This document shows positions 4,591 to 47,559 of a stretch of 64,000 nt of DNA, piece after piece. A program made the translations under genes and the position numbers. The notes beneath the pieces were generated by a model. It was not told the origin of the DNA. It ran no database searches and worked only from the letters and a program-made list of their open reading frames with translations. The DNA is from Dimorphilus gyrociliatus (taxonomy: Eukaryota; Animalia; Annelida), in the NCBI GenBank assembly GCA_904063045.1, contig CAJFCJ010000071.1, forward strand, positions 56,245 through 120,244. Direction: 5' to 3'. Position 1 is the first letter of the stretch, and each line of letters starts with the position of its first letter.

Positions 4591-4604
4591 AAAGAAGGGG
4601 GAAG
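4591..4604 (+). promoter_or_regulatory. Polypurine tract (plus-strand primer)
   Basis: aaagaagggggaag immediately 5' of the LTR start tgtacaac. Confidence 0.9.
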
Positions 4605-4605
4605 T

Positions 4606-5240
4606 TGTACAACTTTGGTTATATTTTACATGCTTGAACTCTATTATTTTATGCAACATATACATGTACATCTTAAAACCTACGCAAGAAAATGCTAAAA
4701 CATTGGCCAAACATAAGTCTGATTAGTCAGCTTGAAGGTTCATCTTTAATTACCAATAAAGGTTTGGCCAAGTTATAATTTAATTAACTTGCCTAGGGTG
4801 TGGCCAAGTTATAATTCAATTAACCTTCCTAAATGTTGAACCTTGTAACATCCTGTTACTAAAGATAAATATGAACTACACATTTTGGCAACTGTAAAGT
4901 GATGATTGGATGTCAGAGACAAACCTCAAAGTATATAAATCCTTATTATTCTCATTTGGCATGCAGCTTCCATCTGGACCCAAGGACCTGGGAAAATCAT
5001 CTGGAAACAACCTCCACTGGAACCATCCATCTACTCCTCAACATTGGAAGACAGTTTGGTAATTTGGCAACCTGCTATTACAAACTATCTACTCTGCTAT
5101 TGAACTCTCATATTGTTACTTGCTTAAGTATTATTATTGCGAATAAACCATTTTAATTTAAACATTTGTTTAAAGGTTCGAGTAGAACCAGTATTGTTAT
5201 AACTTGCAAACGCATAGATTTTGCCAGCAAGAGCAGTACA
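4606..5240 (+). repeat. 3' LTR, 635 bp
   Basis: Begins tgtac, ends gtaca; same length as and near-identical to the solo LTR at 15995-16629; followed by ctag. Confidence 0.95.
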
Positions 5241-6126
5241 CTAGACTTAAATAGACTTGGCTGTAGGCCTTCTAGAATATTGAATTGAATAGTAAGAATT
5301 CTTTTATTTCATCATATTTCTAATTGAGTTTTTGTACCAAAAATTAAAAGTCTAATTAAAATGTTAATATTTTATAAGACCATTTTATTGAAAATGGAAA
5401 CATGTAGAGTTTTTATGTGGAGACAATTTGGTACAAATTAACAAGTCTTTTAGGGATTTATCAAACATTTACTACTTTTGAGATGACCTTTGGCCTTGTC
5501 CTATTAAAATTGTTGCATTTTATGCAACTCATAACAAAAATTCAAAGAGTCACATTCTACTCTTTTGAGGTACTTACAAAGAAAATTTTGCAGAAGAAAA
5601 AATATTATTGTTTATATTTTGGTACTTTGTTGTATTGTAATTGTACGAATTTCGGCTTCTTCTGAACATGCATTTTTTCTATATTGTTTGTTCCATTGTT
5701 AATTCCATAGTGGCACCATCCGTCAAAGAATCTATTTCCTACGAAATAAAAGTCTTTCTAAAGCTCCACAATTATAATTCCTATTAAATAAAAGCCTTTC
5801 TAAAGTTCTATTGTATCTGAAGTCTAAATATCATTATGTTATTAATATTCAAATTTTATTACTTTTTTTTAAATTAATATTTATCTTGACAAGTTAAAGA
5901 CTATTTATTGTGACAAGTAGGGCTTTATTAAACTTAATGTCTTTTCTAATTAGTACAAACTAGATCAATTGTATCTATTGGTGTGAAACTACCAACTTTT
6001 TCAACTGATGACTACTATTTTCTTAGCGTTTTAGTAAAGTAGTTTAAGTTTTCTAAATTATACAGAATATAATGAATAGGCGTTGAAATGCATTCCAATT
6101 GCCTCTACAGTGTCCAGTTCTTAAAA

Positions 6127-7635
6127 ATGGCTACAGACAGCTTGCAAAAAATATCACTAAGGTGTATAAGGAATAATTTATCATTATTGAGTAAATTATG
6201 TAAGGAAAACTCACAAGTTTTACCTCCTGGAATTGGAAATATGATTTTCAGTTTTGTAAAGCAAGATTTGACTCCATTATCTGAGAATGAACTTAACTTT
6301 TTTCATCAGACATTTTACAGTTAACAGACATTTTAAAAAAAAACAAGGTTCCTGATGTAATTTTGGCAATATTTTTAAACAGTCATCCCCTGAAATCTCT
6401 ATCATTGAAATATTTTCGTAATGTGCATGAAATACGGATGTGGTAGAAAACGGCCATAAATCTATGGTTTTACCCTAACCCTAACCCAGGCCTTGTTTTT
6501 GCCTAACCTTTTTGAATAGCCCTAACCCTTAGATGGGACCCTCCTAAGAACATATCAACAGTTATCTTATTCCTCCTAACCATTTCCCAGGCTGAAATCT
6601 AACTTTCAAATATTTCATTTATGGCCGTTTTCGACTGGTCCCATGAAATACCTATTAGTGGCACTCTTGAAGCACTTAAGTGGGAGGACTGCAGTTCATA
6701 CATATTTTTCAAACATGCCCAAAAGAATATTTTAAATTCTGGAAATATTTGTAACCTAAAATCTATCGATATAAATTGTTCTCTCAACAGAATATTTGAT
6801 AATTTCAATGTGCTTATAAAATTGTTAGAATCTTCTGCAGCATCTCTTGAAAAATTTACATACATTGATGCTACTCTAGGATATTCTGAAATTGAAAAAT
6901 TAGGCAATATATTGACAACTTGTACTTCATTAATTGAAATTAATTTTGTATTTAGCAATTCTGTAAAAAATTTTGCAAATCTATTAGATGGTCTAACTTC
7001 AACTTCAAACAAACTTCAAAGGATTCATTTTAAGTCTTGCTTCTTTGAGCCATGTACAAGATTCTGTTTCGCTTGTATCACGGAATTGTAGGCAATTCTG
7101 TTTACATTTTATTTTGGTTACTCTTTGTTTCTCTCACACCGTTCTGTTACACTCACTGACTCATACTGACACATAACATGTAATGTTCTGTTCAAGCCAT
7201 ATGACCAAGTTATATTAAGTGATTTACTAAATGAATGTTTATCACTACAAGAATTTTCTCTAAGTGATTTAATAATAGATAAAAGAGCATTTAGAAAAAT
7301 ATGTAAAGTATTACAAAAATCATCACAATCTCTTAGAAAAATTGACTTTGCTAAGAGTAGATTGAATGAGGATGATTCTGTTCCTTTGATGGATTTACTT
7401 ACAGAATGTAGATTTTTGGAGAAAATCAATTTAAGTGATAATAACTTTTCTGAAGCAGATTTCAGATTTTTGAATTTTGAATTGTTTAACATCACCTTCA
7501 AAAAGTCTGTCATCAATGGCATTTTCATGTTGTTTCTCAAAGAATGAAAATGATAATCCTTTACTAAATTTACTTATAAACTGTTTTGCACTAAAAAAAA
7601 CCATTCTGAAGAATAACAATTTGAATGAAAGAGAT
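6127..7635 (+). pseudogene. BC-box/Cul2-box (VHL-box-like) plus RI-like LRR gene of ZYG-11/ZER1/PRAME-like architecture, disrupted by a MITE and frameshifts; runs into the assembly gap
   Basis: MATDSLQKISLRCIRNNL (BC-box-like), VLPPGIGNMIF (Cul2-box-like), then LxxLxLxxN/C repeats (LEKINLSDNNF, LRKLTLLR); removing the MITE restores YFRNVHEIPISG. Confidence 0.7.
6436..6642 (+). mobile_element. 207-bp MULE-type MITE with telomere-like CCCTAA repeats
   Basis: Subterminal inverted repeat gaaaacggccataaat/atttatggccgttttc; perfect 9-bp TSD atgaaatac at 6427-6435 and 6643-6651. Confidence 0.93.
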
Positions 7636-7822
7636 NNNNNNNNNNNNNNNNNNNNNNNNNNNNNNNNNNNNNNNNNNNNNNNNNNNNNNNNNNNNNNNNN
7701 NNNNNNNNNNNNNNNNNNNNNNNNNNNNNNNNNNNNNNNNNNNNNNNNNNNNNNNNNNNNNNNNNNNNNNNNNNNNNNNNNNNNNNNNNNNNNNNNNNNN
7801 NNNNNNNNNNNNNNNNNNNNNN
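7636..7822. other. Assembly gap (187 N)
   Basis: Run of N; next to a 58-bp direct repeat (units at 7845 and 7903). Confidence 0.99.
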
Positions 7823-8800
7823 TATCTTTCCTTTCCTACTTCCTCCTTCTATTATTTGAAAACTATCAACATTTTCAGCATCAGAACTGACTTCCTGACT
7901 TTCCTTCTATTATTTGAAAACTATCAACATTTTCAGCATCAGAACTGACTTCCTGACTTTTATTGAATGAAATTTCATCATGTACATCAATTCTTCTTTC
8001 TTGATCATTATCTGATGAATGACTTCTTCCTTCCTCATTTTCCACAAAGTTATTTTCAAAATCAAATGATAATGTTAACTGTAAGCAGAATTTCATGTTA
8101 ATAATTGAAGAAAGATTAAGTTTAATACATCACCTGATTTTCTTCCTGAAAGGTTTTATTAACAGTAGACATATGTTTAGGACTACTTTTATCAAATCCA
8201 TTTTCTTCCATCATTTGATCTACTCTTCTTATTCTGATAACAACTTGTTGTTTTGTAATATTGAAACAATCAACACAATAATCAGCATCTGCTTTATAAA
8301 AAAATTCATTGAAATAAATGAAAAAAAATAAATTTGATTACCTTTTGAGCACTTTTGGTGATAAAAGTGTTTACATAATTTGCATCTTATTTTTTGCTGA
8401 TTCCAATAAAATTTCCTCATACAACACCAACAGGTTTTTAAATTCATTTTTACACCAATCAATTCAATAGTTAAACCAATCTCTGTAAAGTATCATTCAA
8501 AATAATAAAAATTCATTTAATTCAAAAGACTTTTCCTTCAGAGGAACAGGAAATAGATTTGTAAAAAAAACTGGTAACAGTAACATTAATGAGGTATGTT
8601 TTGCTGAGAATATCAAAGATATAAAAATAACAGTAAAATAACAAATAACAAAATGTAATAAGTAGAACATCACTCTTTCCCTACTGAAGGGTCAATCAAT
8701 CTTGAAAGGGATAAAGTATCCCTGAAATGGGGCGAACTGTCCCCCAAAATGGGGCGAACTGTCCTGGGGCGAACTGTCCAGGGGCGAACTGTCCTGACCC
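7823..8800 (-). mobile_element. 5' end of a MULE-like DNA transposon (family with GGGGCGAACTGTCC subterminal repeats) carrying a PHD-finger exon pair and acidic linker
   Basis: Four tandem ggggcgaactgtcc motifs ending in tgaccc at 8800; minus strand CWCC...CKLCKHFYHQKC, GT-AG intron, DYCVDC. Confidence 0.75.
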
Positions 8801-9984: not shown

Positions 9985-10270
9985 TTTAACCTGCTGAAGA
10001 AGTTTACAGTCCATCACAAATCATTTTAAAGCCATCTCCCATGTTTGGATTATGACATAATTCTATATTTTCTAATGAAGAACAGTGATTAAAAGCTTCT
10101 CCAAGTGTTATTGCTTGTTTAACATTCAACTCACACCAAGAAAAATTTACGTTGAATAGATTGTCTGATTGTAAATGTAAACCTAGCTGTTTAAATACAG
10201 ATGCTTGCTCTGAGATGTTTCCTATATCTCTTCTATAATAGTTGAGTGATAAAATTTTTAATGAATTCTT
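9985..10270 (-). pseudogene. RI-like LRR gene remnant of the same family as 35.8-38.8 kb and 46.1-46.9 kb
   Basis: Minus strand KNSLKILSLN...VNFSWCELNVKQAITLGEAFNHCSSLENIELCHNPNMGDGFKMICDGL*. Confidence 0.75.
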
Positions 10271-15994: not shown

Positions 15995-16629
15995 TGTACT
16001 GCTCTTGCTGGCAAAATCTATGCGTTTGCAAGTTATAACAATACTGGTTCTACTCGAACCTTTAAACAAATGTTTAAATTAAAATGGTTTATTCGCAATA
16101 ATAATACTTAAGCAAGTAACAATATGAGAGTTCAATAGCAGAGTAGATAGTTTGTAATAGCAGGTTGCCAAATTACCAAACTGTCTTCCAATGTTGAGGA
16201 GTAGATGGATGGTTCCAGTGGAGGTTGTTTCCAGATGATTTTCCCAGGTCCTTGGGTCCAGATGGAAGCTGCATGCCAAATGAGAATAATGAGGATTTAT
16301 ATACTTTGAGGTTTGTCTCTGACATCCAATCATCACTTTACAGTTGCCGAAATGTGTAGTTCATATTTATCTTTAGTAACAGGATGTTACAAGGTTCAAC
16401 ATTTAGGAAGGTTAATTGAATTATAACTTGGCCACACCCTAGGCAAGTTAATTAAATTATAACTTGGCCAAACCTTTATTGGTAATTAAAGATGAACCTT
16501 CAAGCTGACTAATCAGACTTATGTTTGGCCAATGTTATAGCATTTTCTTGCGTAGGTTTTAAGATGTACATGTATATGTTGCATAAAATAATAGAGTTCA
16601 AGCATGTAAAATATAACCAAAGTTGTACA
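15995..16629 (-). repeat. Solo LTR, 635 bp, inserted inside the MULE
   Basis: Reverse complement of 4606-5240; 4-bp TSD ctat at 15991-15994 and 16630-16633. Confidence 0.96.
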
Positions 16630-35769: not shown

Positions 35770-38700
35770 AAAAGTCAAATGTCAATTATTTGCAAACAAC
35801 TTCAAAGATCTAAAAATACGTTCAATTTAAATCATGTAATTTAAATGAAAAACAGACTGAAGAAATTGGATATTTACTTCAAAATTGTTTAAATTTAAGA
35901 GAAATAGACTTGGGAAGAAATGATCAAATGGGAAATGGCATTTTAAAAATTTGTGATGGACTTCAAAATTCTTCAGAATTTTTGGAAAAACAATCTTTTT
36001 CATTATGTAGTTTGAGTGAAAAAATTGGACAGTTGCTGAGGAATTGCTCTAATATAAAAGCTATAAACTTGGAAGGAAATGCTGAAATGGGAAATGGTAT
36101 ATTTGAAATTTGTAATGGACTGCAAAACTCTTCAGATAGTTTGAAAGAACTTATCTTACATACATGTGAATTAAGTGAAGAACAAAGTAAGGCAATTAGA
36201 GATTTGTTAGAAAATTATCAAGAATAAAATTGATATACTTGGGAAGCAATAAAGAAATGGGAAATGGCACATTAAATATTTGCAATGGGCTTCAAAACTG
36301 CACAAATACTTTGGAAAAGCTTTCTTTTTGCCTATGTGATATAAATGAAGATCAATGTAAAACACTTGGAGATTTGTTATACAACTGCTCTAATATAAAA
36401 GTTTTAAACTTGGAAGAAAATACTGAAATGGGAATTGGTATATTTGATATTTGTGATGGACTACAAAACTCTACAGATACATTGAGTTCTCTTTCTTTAT
36501 GCTCCTGTAATTTAAAGATAGAACATACTAAAAAAATTAGAGATTTGTTAAAGAATTGCTCAAACATAAAAGTCATAAACTTATCAGAAAATACAGAAAT
36601 GGAAAAGAAATAATAAGTGTTTGTGAGGAACTTCAAAATTCTTCAGCTACTCCGGAGACAATTATTCTCAGCTCATGTGATTTGAATGACGAAAAAGCTG
36701 AAGCAATTGGAAATTTGTTAAAAATATGTTCAAAAATAAAATCTATAAACTTGGCAGGAAATGAAGAAATGGGAAATGGAATATTCAATATTTGTGATGG
36801 ACTTCAGAATTCTGCATATACATTGGAAAAATTTCATTTTGAGTTTTGTAATTTAAGTGAAGAACATTGTAAAACAATTGGAAATTTACTTCAAAGTTGT
36901 AAAAATATAAGAGTTGTAACATTAGCAGGAAATAAAAGAATGTATAATGGTATATTCAATATTTGTAAAGGACTCAAAATTCTGCAGACAAACTTAAACT
37001 TCTTTCTTTTGAGTCATGTGATTTAAGTGAAAATCAAATTCAAGATATTGCATGTTTGCTAAAAAAGTGCTCAGCTGTAAAAATCAAAAACTATACAGTA
37101 AATGCAGAAATCAGAAATCGAATATTGAACATTTATGAAGACCTGCAAATTTTTCAAAAACATTAAAAGAGCGTTTTTAAAATCATATAATATCCATGAA
37201 AAAGAAAGTAAAGTAATTGGAAGTTTGCTAAAAAATTGCTCAAATATAGAAATAGTATACTTAAGAGGAAATACTGGAATGGGTAATGGTGTATTGGATA
37301 TTTGCAAAGGACTTTGTAATTGTTTAAAGACTTTAAAGGAAGTTGTTTTGATATCCTGTTATTTAAATGAAAATCAAAGCAAAACTGTTGGAAATTTGCT
37401 AAAAATTTGTTCAAATGTAAAAGTCATAGACTTGACAGATAATGCTGATATGGGAAATGGGTTGTTGAATATTTGTCATGGACTGCAAAATTCTTCAAAT
37501 ACTTTAAAACAACTTTGTTTTTCTTCATGTAATTTAGATGAAGAACAAGGTAAAGCAATTGGAGATTTGTTAGTTAATTGTATAAATATAGAGATTATTG
37601 ATGCAGAAATGGGAAATGGGTTATTGAATATTTGTGATGGACTTTGAAACTCTACAAATACATTGAAAGCTCTTGATTTTGAGTCATGTAATTTAAATGA
37701 TGACCAATGTAAAGCCATTGGAGATTTGTTAAAGAATTGCTCAAAAATACTATATATAAACTTGGAGGGAAATACAGAGACTGGAAATGGAATGTTGGAA
37801 ATATTTGATGGACTTCAATCTTCATTCAATACTTTGGAAGTTCTATTTTTATCTTTATGTAATTTGAATGAAGAGCAGAGTAGAGCAGTTAGCTTTTTGC
37901 TCAAACACTGCCCAAATATAAAAAAATTAAAAATAGGAGGAAATGAAGAAATGGGAAATAGCTTATTAGATATTGTTGAAAGACTTCAATACTGTACAAA
38001 TGCAATGGAAGAGCTTTGCTTATCCTCATGTAGCATAACTGAAGAGCAAAGTAAAGCATTCGGTGGTTTGTTCAAGAATTGCTCAAATATAAGATTATTA
38101 AGATTGGAAAGAAATCCTGAAATGGGAATTGGCATTATGGATATTTGTGATGGTCTTCTAAACTCTTCAAATACTTTGAAAGTACTATCCTTAATGTGGT
38201 GTATTATAAATGAAGAACAAAGTAAAGCAATTGGAGATTTGTTAAAGAACTGCTCAAATATAAATATAATAGACTTGGGAGGAAATGTAGAAATGGGAAA
38301 TGGAATATTCAATATTTGTGATAGACTTCAAAACTCTTCAGATAGTTTGGAAGAACTTATCTTATGTTCATGTGATATAAGGGAAGAACAAAGTAAGACA
38401 ATTGGAGATTTGTTAAAGAATTCCTCAGGTATGTATGTAATAAACTTGGGAGGAAATACAGAAATGGGAACTGGCTTTTTGAATATTTGTGATGGGCTTC
38501 AAAGTACTTAGCATTCTCTGAAGGAACTTTATTTTTGTTCATGTAATTTAGATGAAGCACAAAGTCATGCAATTGGAGATTTGTTAGAGAATTGCATAAA
38601 TATAGAGTGTATTGACTTGAGAGGAAATGAAGAAATGGGATATGGGTTAGTGAATATATTTTATGCAATCAAAACTGTGCAAAAATATTAAAAAACATAC

Positions 38701-44379: not shown

Positions 44380-44419
44380 CAAAAACACACCTCACCAACT
44401 TAACAAGCATATAGTGTTT

Positions 44420-44893
44420 TGTACAACTTTGGTTATATTTTACATGCTTGAACTCTATTATTTTATGCAACTTATATATGTACATCTTAAAACCTATGCA
44501 AGAAAATGCTATAACATTGGCCAAACATAAGTCTGATTAGTCAGCTTGAAGGCTCATCTTTAATTACCAATAAAGGTTGGGCCAAGTTATAATTTAATTA
44601 ACTTGCCTAGGGTGTAGCCAAGTTATAATTCAATTAACCTCCTAAATCTTGAACCTTGTAACATCCCGTTACTAAACATAAATATGAACTACACATTTTG
44701 GCAACTGTAAAGTGATGATTGGATATCAGAGGCAAACCTCAAAGTATATAAATCCTCACTATTCTCATTTTGCATGCAGCTTCCATCTGGATCAAAGGAC
44801 CTGGGAAGATAGCCTGGAAACAACCTCCACTGGAACCATCCATCTACTCCTCAACATTGAAAGACAGTTTGGTAATTTGGCAACCTGCTATTA
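44420..44893 (+). repeat. 3'-truncated LTR of the Gypsy family
   Basis: Aligns to 4606-about 5080, then diverges after caacctgctatta. Confidence 0.93.
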
Positions 44894-45231
44894 AGAACTA
44901 AAAATAACTCTTTCAAGATTCTATTAGTTTGAGTACTTTGGCAAATTGGTGAATGATTGGAAAGGACCATTACAGTTGTGACGAACCAGAAATTCTGACT
45001 ACTGTAGTCTCTGACAATAGCCAATTGTGTTGCAGCATGCCAAATTAACATTGAATTATGCTTAGACATTCAAATATTTAGTTAAGACAATCAAACTTTT
45101 TTTGCATTATTCACCCAGGCACAAAATGTTTTATTTTTATTTTATTATTATAGTATTCTTATTAAAAATAACAAAAACAAGGAATAGAGGTGAAACTGAA
45201 ACTAAAAATAGAAAAATTCCATATTGTCAAA

Positions 45232-46716
45232 ATGGCGACCAAACAATATACTCTGCATGAAAATGAAGTGGAATGTTCAATTTGCTTTGAATCTTTAGTT
45301 GGAAGAGATCAAAGAATGCTACCATGTCAACATACATATTGTCTTGAATGCATTCAACAACTCAGAATTGAAAATAGTGCAATTTGTTGTCCTCAATGTA
45401 GACAAAATATGAAAATAAAAAATGGAGATATTAATCAACTTCAACATAATCGAATTATAAAATCTGTAATTGATATTAACAAGGAGCCCAGCTTATGCAA
45501 ATATCATGCCAAAAAGTCAGATATTTATTGCCAAACACATAATATTCAAGGTTTATGTACTTCATGTTTGGATGAAAACCATGAGTCTTGTCAAGTTTTC
45601 TCAATGGAAAAATATCAAAAACCGGAGGAACAATTCCGAATAATTTTAGATCAAGACCAAAAGAAAATGACTGAGATTTTTAATAAAATTAATGAACATG
45701 AAAGAAAATCAATAGAAAAAATAAAAAACAAATACAACATTTTGAGGGATAAATTTACAGAGTTGAATAAACTTAGGATTCAATTTTATAAAAAATTCAC
45801 AACTGAACACAAAAAACTGGAAAATTTATTAATTAACTCCAAGAAAACCAAGAATGAAGAAATAGAAATATATTTAGATTTTCAAGTTGATTATGATTTT
45901 TTCAAATGTTTTGATATGAACATTAAAAATGCAGAAAAAGATTTAACAGATAATCAATTCAAAGCATTATCAATGTTGAAAAAACACTTAGAAAATGAAA
46001 AAATTGAAATATTTAACAAACCAATAATTTGTAATAATGTGAAAGATTTGGCAAATCTAATGAAATCCAGAATTAAACCAATTAATTTAGATTTTAAAGA
46101 AATTAATTTAAACAGTGAAAAAACTGAAGATATTAGTAATTTACTAAAACATTGTTCCACAATAGAAACAATAAATTTAGCTGGTAATAAAGAAATGGAT
46201 GAAGGAATATCACTTATTTGTGAAGAACTGAAGATGTCATCAAACACCTTGAAAAATCTTGATTTCCATAATTGTAATTTACAGAGACAACAATGTAGAG
46301 ATATTGGAAATTTACTAAAACATTGTTCTTCAATAGAAACAATAGATTTATCAAGGAATCCAGGAATGAATGAAGGAATATCACTTATTTGTGAAGGACT
46401 AAAGATGTCATCAAACACCTTGAAAAATCTTGATTTCTGTAATTGTAATTTACAGAGACAACAATGTAGAGATATTGGAAATTTACTAAAACATTGTTCC
46501 ACAATAGAAACAATAAATTTAGCTGGTAATAAAGAAATGGATGAAGGAATATCACTTATTTGTGAAGGACTAAAGATGTCATCAAACACCTTGAAAAATT
46601 TTGATTTCCATAATTGTAATTTACAGAGAGAACATAGAGATATTCAAAAGTTACTAAAACATTGTTCCAAATTAAAAACAATAGATAGCAAGTCTGGAAT
46701 TTGCACAATCAGTTGA
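45232..46716 (+). CDS. Intronless TRIM-like protein: RING - B-box2 - coiled coil - RI-like LRRs (494 aa from ATG 45232)
   Basis: C3HC4 RING CSICFESL...PCQHTYCLECI...CPQCR; B-box CKYH...YCQTH...LCTSCLDENH; Lys/Glu-rich coiled coil; 57-aa LRR units; caaaATGGcg start context. Confidence 0.92.
   Translation: MATKQYTLHENEVECSICFESLVGRDQRMLPCQHTYCLECIQQLRIENSAICCPQCRQNMKIKNGDINQLQHNRIIKSVIDINKEPSLCKYHAKKSDIYCQTHNIQGLCTSCLDENHESCQVFSMEKYQKPEEQFRIILDQDQKKMTEIFNKINEHERKSIEKIKNKYNILRDKFTELNKLRIQFYKKFTTEHKKLENLLINSKKTKNEEIEIYLDFQVDYDFFKCFDMNIKNAEKDLTDNQFKALSMLKKHLENEKIEIFNKPIICNNVKDLANLMKSRIKPINLDFKEINLNSEKTEDISNLLKHCSTIETINLAGNKEMDEGISLICEELKMSSNTLKNLDFHNCNLQRQQCRDIGNLLKHCSSIETIDLSRNPGMNEGISLICEGLKMSSNTLKNLDFCNCNLQRQQCRDIGNLLKHCSTIETINLAGNKEMDEGISLICEGLKMSSNTLKNFDFHNCNLQREHRDIQKLLKHCSKLKTIDSKSGICTIS
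46150..46690 (+). repeat. 171-bp tandem repeat encoding the 57-aa LRR units
   Basis: cattgttc unit starts at 46150, 46321, 46492 and 46660 (171, 171, 168 bp). Confidence 0.95.
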
Positions 46717-46897
46717 TATAAATGAAATAGAAAGTAAAGTAATTGGAAGTTTGCTAAAAAATTGCTCAAATTTAGAAAAACTAAATTTAAGAGGAAATAC
46801 TAGAATGGATAATGGTGTAATGAATATTTGTGAAGGACTTTGTAATTCTACAAAGACATCAAAGGAATTTGTTTTGAAATCCTGTTATTTAAATGCT
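46715..46897 (+). pseudogene. Out-of-frame extra LRR unit downstream of the TRIM-LRR stop
   Basis: ESKVIGSLLKNCSNLEKLNLRGNTRMDNG...SCYLN; closely similar at DNA level to 37190-37367. Confidence 0.85.
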
Positions 46898-47559
46898 CCT
46901 TTTCCCATCAAACCAGATGATCCTGTTATCACAACTTTCATATCTTCTTCTGAGTATTATTCCTCCTTATACAAACTGCTGGGATAAATTAGAGCTTAAA
47001 ATCAAAATTAACCTTCTGCAAATGCAATTTCACATATATTGATCAGATCTATTATATAATAAATCAAATATATTCAACTAGAATGTATATAGCGTATTGA
47101 CCTACTTTCTCCTAATCTATAGTGCCTAGATTGGCTTGATAAAAATTTTCTAATGATTTTATTAAGAAATCTACAAGATTGCGATAATAGAAATAGAGAT
47201 AAATGAATTCTTTTTTCAACAACATTCGAGCCTTTATGCTCAAATAATAATAAAAAATAATTTCTATATTCACCTGCACTGAAAATCAAAATGGCTGCCA
47301 ATATGGAGATTGATCTAAATGTTTACTACTTGAATTTTTTTATTGACTATCTTCTAAAGGAAATAAATAATATAAAATAAAAAAGTTTAGTTTTTGTGGA
47401 ATAATTCGATGAATAAAGCTATTTTTTGACGATGATATAGTAGACGTTTTCATTTATGGCCGTTTTCAACAGGACCCGTGGAGATTTTAATGCTTGTTTG
47501 GCTAAGATAAAAGAGAATAAAGGTCTTAAATACATTAATGTTAATTACAAATCCACCAG

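What the first reader, a model, noticed from the sequence alone, without database searches (positions are those of the whole stretch)
45232..46897. TRIM-LRR: tripartite-motif E3 ligase fused to NLR/RI-type leucine-rich repeats
Seen: one intact intronless ORF with a C3HC4 RING, B-box2, coiled coil and 57-aa LRR units. Established: the standard TRIM C-terminal classes use PRY-SPRY, NHL, COS-FN3, PHD-bromo, MATH, ARF, filamin or TM domains rather than LRR, and 57-aa (28+29) units are the ribonuclease-inhibitor/NLR LRR type. Inference: this is a restriction-factor-like ubiquitin ligase whose specificity comes from an NLR-style sensor. An out-of-frame extra unit after the stop suggests the LRR tail was recently shortened.
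Basis: partly seen in the sequence, partly recalled or inferred. Interest (0 to 1): 0.85.

Follow-up and report, generated by a model that had tools for sequence, protein, structure and literature searches.

The report
TRIM-type ubiquitin ligase with LRR tail
This is a real, uninterrupted gene-like reading frame for a TRIM-type ubiquitin ligase whose usual target-binding end is replaced by NLR/ribonuclease-inhibitor-type leucine-rich repeats. It is one member of an expanded family, not described in the papers searched, found in a tiny marine worm and at least two other unidentified samples.

Summary
Window 45232-46716 (+) is one intact 494-aa ORF. It has a C3HC4 RING, a B-box2, a long coiled-coil helix, and eight LRR strands built from 57-aa (171-bp) units that are 89% alike.

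Sequence profiles and predicted folds match TRIM RBCC structures (TRIM3, TRIM2, TRIM21, KAP1). The tail matches NLRP and ribonuclease-inhibitor LRRs.

It is not a one-off. At least 32 diverged representatives share this head and tail. On a tree of the heads alone they form one group. They include unnamed Dimorphilus gyrociliatus proteins and ORFs from two unidentified SRA data sets. This scan also flagged other copies on other pieces of the same genome.

TRIM surveys and phrase searches gave no description of a TRIM-LRR class.

The stop codon is real: three DNA runs agree with no differences.
- The ORF ends in the repeat phase where most relatives end.
- The out-of-frame unit is 87% identical to a decayed LRR array 9 kb upstream, but only about 70% to the ORF's own units.

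No RNA data could be found, so expression and any immune role remain inference.

Verdict: a new C-terminal variant of the TRIM kind. Interest is moderately high.

The parts
45232..46716 (+). Complete intronless coding sequence, 494 aa, including the TGA at 46714-46716
   Evidence: the start aligns with residue 1 of relatives; three DNA runs confirm the 3' end with no differences
45274..45402 (+). C3HC4 RING finger (residues 15-57). It keeps the E2-contact Ile17, Pro54 and the linchpin Arg57.
   Evidence: Pfam hits above cut-off; ligands conserved in 54 heads; TRIM2 RING fold match at rmsd 2.0 A
45496..45591 (+). B-box type 2 zinc finger (residues 89-120)
   Evidence: profile matches to the TRIM21, TRIM3, TRIM72, TRIM5, TRIM29 and TRIM41 B-box regions; conserved ligands; pLDDT 95-98
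45604..45846 (+). Coiled-coil helix (about residues 125-205)
   Evidence: AF2 helices 125-192 and 196-205; the profile aligns through TRIM3 RBCC position 239; KAP1 RBCC fold match
45847..46083 (+). Low-confidence linker between the coiled coil and the LRR (residues 206-284)
   Evidence: pLDDT 26-39 in the full model, 56-81 in the head model
46084..46686 (+). RI/NLR-type LRR domain (residues 285-485, eight beta strands)
   Evidence: pLDDT above 90; Foldseek matches to NLRP1/3/5/9, NLRX1 and ribonuclease inhibitor
46128..46683 (+). 171-bp tandem repeat, 3.3 copies, 89% matches, which encodes the 57-aa LRR units
   Evidence: unit comparison
46707..46895 (+). Post-stop LRR unit, out of frame with the ORF (frame +1, open 46682-46987). 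It is a 189-bp patch 87% identical to 37181-37369.
37181..37369 (+). Counterpart of the post-stop unit, inside the decayed LRR array at 35790-38660

Best explanation
The locus encodes a member of a lineage-specific TRIM (RBCC) family. In this family the C-terminal recognition domain is a ribonuclease-inhibitor/NLR-type LRR solenoid instead of a SPRY domain or NHL propeller.

Shown:
- The reading frame is intact and uninterrupted.
- The RING, B-box2, coiled coil and LRR are each supported by profile and fold evidence.
- The RING keeps all its zinc ligands and the residues that RING E3s use to engage a charged E2 (Ile17, Pro54, Arg57).
- Heads that carry LRR tails form one group next to heads that carry a beta-rich, propeller-like tail. 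This points to a single swap of the recognition domain.
- The heads are closest to the TRIM2/TRIM3/TRIM56 type.

Inferred mechanism:
- The coiled coil makes an antiparallel dimer, as in other TRIMs.
- The LRR concave face binds a target.
- Target binding brings RINGs together, so that the target, or the ligase itself, is ubiquitinated.

Several features fit a fast-evolving recognition role, most likely in immunity or genetic conflict. The family is expanded, intronless and partly tandem. Unit number varies from 2 to 14. The units in this copy were amplified recently. This functional step is inference only.
For: ORF and start.

RING: Pfam hits.

RBCC: profile matches to TRIM21, TRIM3, TRIM2, TRIM72 and KAP1. 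RBCC model with mean pLDDT 84 and TRIM fold matches.

Catalytic features: invariant ligands and E2-contact residues in 54 heads.

LRR: fold matches to NLRP and RI.

Family: D. gyrociliatus proteins P0001, P0002, P0004, P0010, P0011, P0013, P0045 and P0049, plus Logan ORFs. Single-exon paralogs in GCA_904063045.1. Tandem pairs.

Tree: the 32 LRR-bearing heads lie on one side of a branch, SH-aLRT 99.

Units: 237 units, 2-14 per protein.

Genome context: the D. gyrociliatus genome paper reports that its few expanded families are mostly locally duplicated immune-related genes (PMC7854359). It does not name this family.
Against: No RNA run holding the locus was found, so transcription is untested.

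The exact protein is not in the 15-billion-protein collection, so this copy may be unannotated.

The locus lies between transposon fragments and next to a decayed LRR array.

Differences between its units show no purifying selection (pN/pS about 0.8-1.7 on 12-21 differences). That fits either diversification or decay.

No ligand, E2 or activity data exist for any member. The B-box does not reach Pfam's threshold on this protein alone.
Confidence: 0.6

Rival explanations
1. This copy is a young duplicate on its way to becoming a pseudogene. The family is functional, but this locus is an unexpressed remnant. Its array was rearranged by unit amplification, a frameshift or conversion patch at the 3' end, and a breakpoint at 46895.
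For: An out-of-frame LRR unit follows the stop, with sharp breakpoints at both ends. Transposon fragments flank the locus and a high-copy repeat lies at 44414-44983. The neighbouring array at 35790-38660 is already broken. The exact protein is absent from public protein sets. No RNA evidence was found. pN/pS between units is about 1.
Against: The 494-codon frame is fully open in DNA with about 30% G+C, where stops are frequent. All sixteen zinc ligands and the E2-contact residues are intact. The protein's length and end phase match those of relatives such as P0004, P0018 and P0019. The LRR is the size of the solved NLRP1 LRR domain (TM by target 0.82).
Confidence: 0.3
2. The gene is functional, but the LRR is not a sensor of foreign molecules. 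It would be an adaptor for the animal's own substrates, or an autoinhibitory lid as in NLRs. The family expansion would then serve a non-immune process such as germline or developmental proteolysis.
For: RI-type LRRs serve as substrate receptors in ordinary ubiquitin ligases (the FBXL and PRAME/LRRC14 types; established knowledge). The same genome holds a second LRR family with a different N-terminus (P0157 and window 6127-7900). The closest RING relatives, TRIM2 and TRIM3, are not immune proteins.
Against: Birth-and-death expansion, variation in unit number and recent unit amplification are more typical of recognition families under changing selection. This argument is indirect.
Confidence: 0.3
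3. The fusion is an artefact: an assembly mis-join of a RING gene and an LRR gene.
For: Short-read contigs break inside the tandem units, so no single contig spans the whole ORF.
Against: Contigs from two runs cover 45219-46167, across the head-to-LRR junction, with no differences. Dozens of paralogs from three data sources have the same head and tail in one ORF.
Confidence: 0.02

Closest known systems
TRIM/RBCC ubiquitin ligases, especially Marin's subfamily C (TRIM2, TRIM3, TRIM32, TRIM56, TRIM71; classes VII and X)
   Same: RING, B-box2 and coiled coil in the canonical order. The best sequence-profile matches are TRIM3, TRIM2, TRIM56 and TRIM21 and the fold matches are to TRIM RBCC structures. 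A sister group in the same organisms has a beta-rich, propeller-like C-terminus.
   Different: The C-terminal domain is an RI/NLR-type LRR, which no TRIM class in the surveys read contains (PMC3503706, PMC2533329, PMC3137616). The genes are intronless and expanded in one lineage.
NLR (NACHT-LRR) innate immune receptors and ribonuclease inhibitor
   Same: The LRR has a 57-aa two-repeat unit. The best fold matches are the NLRP1, NLRP3, NLRP5, NLRP9 and NLRX1 LRRs and RI.
   Different: There is no NACHT or other NTPase domain and no death-fold domain. The N-terminal effector is an E3 ligase head.
LRSAM1 (an LRR-coiled coil-SAM-RING E3 that recognises bacteria; reviewed in PMC8567218; oyster homolog in PMC11863841)
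   Same: One polypeptide combines an LRR recognition domain with a RING E3. This gives a precedent for LRR-directed ubiquitination of foreign targets, including in a lophotrochozoan.
   Different: The domain order is reversed, there is no B-box, a SAM domain is present, and no sequence relationship was detected here.
Teleost NLR-B30.2 receptors and finTRIMs (PMC2657112)
   Same: Modules are shuffled between the TRIM and NLR families within expanded families. An Atlas fold hit to a NACHT-LRR-PRY/SPRY cluster shows the mirror-image combination.
   Different: In fish the TRIM recognition domain (B30.2) is added to an NLR. Here the NLR-type LRR is added to a TRIM head.
Uncharacterised B-box or RING plus LRR proteins in AlphaFold DB and the ESM Atlas (A0A814JAE2, A0A815G8F3, A0A820AZP3, A0E2B2; Atlas clusters with zf-B_box plus LRR_4/LRR_8)
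   Same: Structural alignments span nearly the whole model, from head to LRR. The Atlas clusters combine a B-box with LRRs.
   Different: Identity is only 14-18%. The LRRs in the Atlas clusters are of the LRR_4/LRR_8 type, and the organisms are not shown. None of these proteins appeared among the 150 best RBCC-profile hits, so they are probably independent fusions. I could not fetch their sequences.

Membership tests
TRIM/RBCC | N-terminal C3HC4 RING finger | tested here: met
   Pfam hits above cut-off; ligands invariant; TRIM2 RING fold match at rmsd 2.0 A
TRIM/RBCC | B-box type 2 directly after the RING | tested here: met
   Family profiles align through the B-box of TRIM21, TRIM3 and TRIM72, and to isolated TRIM5, TRIM29 and TRIM41 B-boxes. 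Eight ligands are conserved. pLDDT is 95-98. Pfam zf-B_box alone is below threshold for this protein and weak in relatives.
TRIM/RBCC | Coiled coil after the B-box | tested here: met
   Helix 125-192. The profile aligns to TRIM3 RBCC up to chain position 239 and to KAP1 RBCC. Foldseek matches the KAP1 tripartite motif. Dimerisation itself was not tested.
TRIM/RBCC | C-terminal domain of one of the recognised classes (COS/FN3/SPRY, PHD-bromo, NHL, filamin, MATH, ARF, TM or none) | tested here: not met
   The C-terminus is an RI-type LRR. The TRIM surveys read hold no mention of LRR.
TRIM/RBCC | E3 ubiquitin ligase activity | not testable with these tools
   Only the conservation of Ile17, Pro54 and Arg/Lys57 supports competence.
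NLR (NACHT-LRR) | Central NACHT/NB-ARC NTPase domain | tested here: not met
   No NACHT or AAA hit in Pfam at E up to 1. Residues 125-284 model as a helix and a linker.
NLR (NACHT-LRR) | C-terminal RI-type LRR | tested here: met
   Fold matches to NLRP and NLRX1 LRRs; 57-aa period
Ribonuclease-inhibitor-like LRR class | Alternating 28/29-residue repeats giving a 57-residue unit, with a helix on the convex side | tested here: met
   171-bp period. Strand-helix alternation with one strand every 28-29 residues. RI matches 1dfj, 4peq and 4per.
LRSAM1 | N-terminal LRR, then coiled coil, SAM and a C-terminal RING | tested here: not met
   The order here is RING-B-box-coiled coil-LRR. There is no SAM hit.
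F-box/LRR or PRAME-type substrate receptors | An F-box or BC-box head that recruits a cullin ligase | tested here: not met
   No F-box hit. The head is a RING-B-box.

The most novel reading that the evidence does not exclude
RBCC-LRR proteins are a previously unrecognised class of cytosolic pattern-recognition ubiquitin ligases. In dinophilid annelids, a TRIM head would have captured an NLR-type LRR once and the fusion then radiated. These proteins would sense foreign molecules directly through the LRR and respond by ubiquitination rather than by NACHT-driven oligomerisation.
Probability: 0.25. Interest if true: 0.8.

Novelty: new variant of a known kind. Interest (0 to 1): 0.6.

Why it matters
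TRIMs and NLRs are two of the main families of intracellular innate immune proteins, and each is defined by its own recognition module. A family that joins the TRIM effector head to the NLR-type recognition module would show that these modules are interchangeable in nature. It would add a C-terminal class to the TRIM classification. It would also give a compact, single-exon system for asking how an LRR can direct a RING ligase. Many paralogs with 2-14 units are available for comparison. Because the family is expanded in an animal with a very small, streamlined genome, its retention suggests a real function.

Tried and rejected
RNA evidence. Both run searches returned only DNA-like runs. Expression therefore remains untested.

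Intron at the 3' end. I found no plausible splice donor and acceptor that would join the ORF to the +1-frame unit (reading). Rejected.

Assembly error at the stop. Rejected, because contigs from three runs agree with no differences.

Identity of the Logan source organisms. A paper search for the SRA accession prefix found only unrelated studies.

dN/dS against a close paralog. This was not possible, because the nearest relatives are only 30-40% identical. Comparing units within the gene has too few differences to decide anything.

Bacterial promoter and terminator scan. Run, but irrelevant for a eukaryotic locus, and the counts were at shuffle level for promoters.

The beta-rich sister tail as an NHL propeller. 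Only weak WD40/PQQ-like hits, with the best E-value 0.0017. Not established.

A word-indexed search with the 23-sequence family profile found no named RBCC-LRR protein outside D. gyrociliatus. That search scored only 8000 candidates, so absence elsewhere is not shown.

The genome paper's text and the supplements held as text do not mention this family.

Full report
**What is in the sequence**

Window 45232-46716 on the + strand is a single open frame of 494 codons ending in TGA. The window has about 30% G+C, so a frame this long is not expected by chance. The ATG at 45232 aligns with residue 1 of many relatives, so the ORF is a complete coding sequence without introns. The finding's end coordinate, 46897, includes a further LRR unit that lies beyond the stop in another frame.

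**The head is a TRIM tripartite motif**

- RING. Pfam places RING models above their curated cut-offs at residues 14-58.
- B-box. The B-box does not reach Pfam's threshold on this protein alone. A profile of four related heads aligns RING plus B-box to TRIM21 (5olm, E 1.8e-13). It also matches isolated B-boxes of TRIM5, TRIM29 and TRIM41.
- Whole motif. A profile of 54 heads aligns positions 8-209 to the TRIM3 RING-B-box-coiled-coil construct (8amr, E 5e-21), and also matches TRIM2, TRIM56, TRIM72 and KAP1.
- Model. With that alignment AlphaFold2 models residues 1-285 at mean pLDDT 84. The RING and B-box reach 95-98, and there is a helix at 125-192. Foldseek's best matches are the KAP1 tripartite motif, TRIM21 RING-B-box and the TRIM2 RING at 2.0 A.
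- Conserved residues. Across the 54 heads the eight RING ligands and eight B-box ligands are invariant or nearly so. The residues that RING ligases use to engage a charged E2 are kept: Ile/Leu/Val at position 17 in 51 heads, Pro54 in 40, and Arg/Lys57 in 43. Their role in E2 engagement is established knowledge of RING E3s, not something tested here.

**The tail is an RI/NLR-type LRR**

Tandem Repeats Finder reports a 171-bp unit, 3.3 copies, 89% matches, at 46128-46683. That gives 57-aa units, each holding two repeats. The full-length model has pLDDT above 90 over residues 285-485, with a strand every 28-29 residues. Foldseek's best PDB matches are the LRRs of NLRP5, NLRP3, NLRP1 (TM by target 0.82), NLRP9 and NLRX1, and ribonuclease inhibitor. 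There is no NACHT domain.

**It belongs to a family**

- The first protein search found D. gyrociliatus [quoted passage not shown] entries of 485-797 aa with the same head and tail.
- An exhaustive profile search with the head alone gave 25 hits below 1e-30. Nearly all of the best 35 carry the same 57-aa units.
- Named sources are D. gyrociliatus only. The remainder are ORFs from Logan assemblies of SRR23372216/28/29/31 and ERR14224706.
- Those SRR contigs are AT-rich animal DNA and share no repeats with the window. Two D. gyrociliatus contigs share several transposon copies with the window at 84-92% identity. Together with the gypsy-with-envelope elements the genome paper describes (PMC7854359), I infer that the window is D. 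gyrociliatus or a very close relative. The family therefore occurs in at least one other organism.
- The paralogs P0001 and P0002 are single-exon in the public assembly. Tandem pairs occur in the SRR organism.
- Earlier first-reader notes of this scan list further copies on other pieces of the same genome. I did not see those sequences.

**One origin of the fusion**

A maximum-likelihood tree was built from the heads alone: 92 rows, LRR columns excluded by construction. It puts all 32 LRR-bearing proteins on one side of a branch (SH-aLRT 99). They sit inside a 66-row group whose other members have a beta-rich C-terminus of about 250 aa. Canonical TRIMs with SPRY or other tails fall outside that group. 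The beta-rich tail gives only weak propeller-like hits. The simplest reading is one replacement of a propeller-like recognition domain by an LRR, followed by birth-and-death expansion. The proteins carry 2-14 units each, 237 units in all.

**The 3' end**

The stop is real. Contigs from three DNA runs, under two organism labels, cover 46570-46981 with no differences and no insertions or deletions.

After the stop, frame +1 is open from about 46682 to 46987. It encodes one good LRR unit and then unrelated sequence. Two results weaken that reading:
- Most relatives end 14-25 residues after their last full unit, just past a final short strand. This ORF ends in the same phase, with nine extra residues.
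- The 189 bp at 46707-46895 are 87% identical to 37181-37369, which lies inside a long LRR array at 35790-38660 that is broken into several frames. The same 189 bp are only about 70% identical to the ORF's own units. The similarity stops sharply at both ends.

The piece may be a conversion tract, a juxtaposed fragment, or an older 3' part of the gene. I cannot decide among these. Some short contigs join 46512 to 46805, which would put the piece in frame. Whether they come from an allele or a paralog is unknown.

The three full units differ at 12-21 positions, with pN/pS about 0.8-1.7. Those numbers are too few to separate diversification from relaxed constraint.

**Mechanism**

What is shown is an intact RBCC head with a competent-looking RING, joined to a folded LRR the size of the NLRP1 LRR domain. 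By analogy with solved TRIMs, I infer an antiparallel coiled-coil dimer. Its LRRs would bind a target, and its RINGs would become active when brought together, ubiquitinating the target or the ligase itself.

An immune or conflict role is suggested only by the family's mode of evolution and by precedent. LRSAM1, an unrelated LRR-RING ligase, recognises bacteria, including in an oyster (PMC8567218, PMC11863841). Fish have made the reverse fusion, an NLR carrying a TRIM-type B30.2 domain.

No RNA run was available, so even transcription of this copy is untested. The exact protein is absent from public protein sets.

**Novelty**

- Phrase searches for TRIM-LRR, RBCC-LRR, RING-LRR and similar terms found no paper that describes such a protein.
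- Three TRIM family surveys do not mention LRR.
- The D. gyrociliatus genome paper reports nine expanded families, mostly immune-related local duplicates. It does not name this one in the text or supplements held.
- The proteins are therefore public but uncharacterised.
- Whole-length structural matches to a few uncharacterised AlphaFold DB proteins, and Atlas clusters that combine a B-box with other LRR types, suggest that similar fusions arose elsewhere. I could not retrieve those sequences to test this.

I rate the finding as a new variant of a known kind: TRIM ligases with a new recognition domain.

Noticed in passing
window 35790-38660 (+): A long RI-type LRR array of about 17 units, broken into at least five ORFs in different frames, with no RBCC head upstream. 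GC skew is strongly positive (+0.28) over 36-38 kb. It holds the closest relative of the post-stop unit.
   Followed up: partly
window 6127-7900 (+): A second kind of LRR gene. Its N-terminus matches the D. gyrociliatus 908-aa LRR protein P0157 (52% over 62 aa) and the Logan proteins P0003, P0005 and P0006, with LRR pieces downstream. ORF translations show a run of X (unknown bases) at about 7630-7830.
   Followed up: partly
window 9995-10264 (-): An isolated fragment of an RI-type LRR unit.
   Followed up: no
window 44414-44983: A very high-copy repeat just upstream of the gene. Summed contig depth is hundreds to thousands of times that of the unique gene head, in all the DNA runs. Related copies lie at 4604-5242 and 15995-16629 and on a D. 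gyrociliatus contig (L007).
   Followed up: partly
window 46352-46693: Word depth over the LRR units is 5-60 times that of the gene's unique head in three DNA runs. Either there are more unit copies than were assembled, or close paralogs exist elsewhere in the genome.
   Followed up: no
P0023, P0031 (D. gyrociliatus); L012:885-6506: A sister subfamily with the same RBCC head but a beta-rich C-terminus of about 250 aa that matches no Pfam family and gives only weak propeller-like hits. Three such genes lie side by side on one Logan contig.
   Followed up: partly
L008:18335-22139: In D. gyrociliatus, a gene with faint NACHT and clear caspase (Peptidase_C14) hits lies 6 kb downstream of the RBCC-LRR gene P0002.
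   Followed up: no
AlphaFold DB cluster hits: RI-type LRRs like this one are also found fused to ADP-ribosyltransferase, MACPF-like, U-box, F-box and kinase domains in uncharacterised proteins of other organisms.
   Followed up: no
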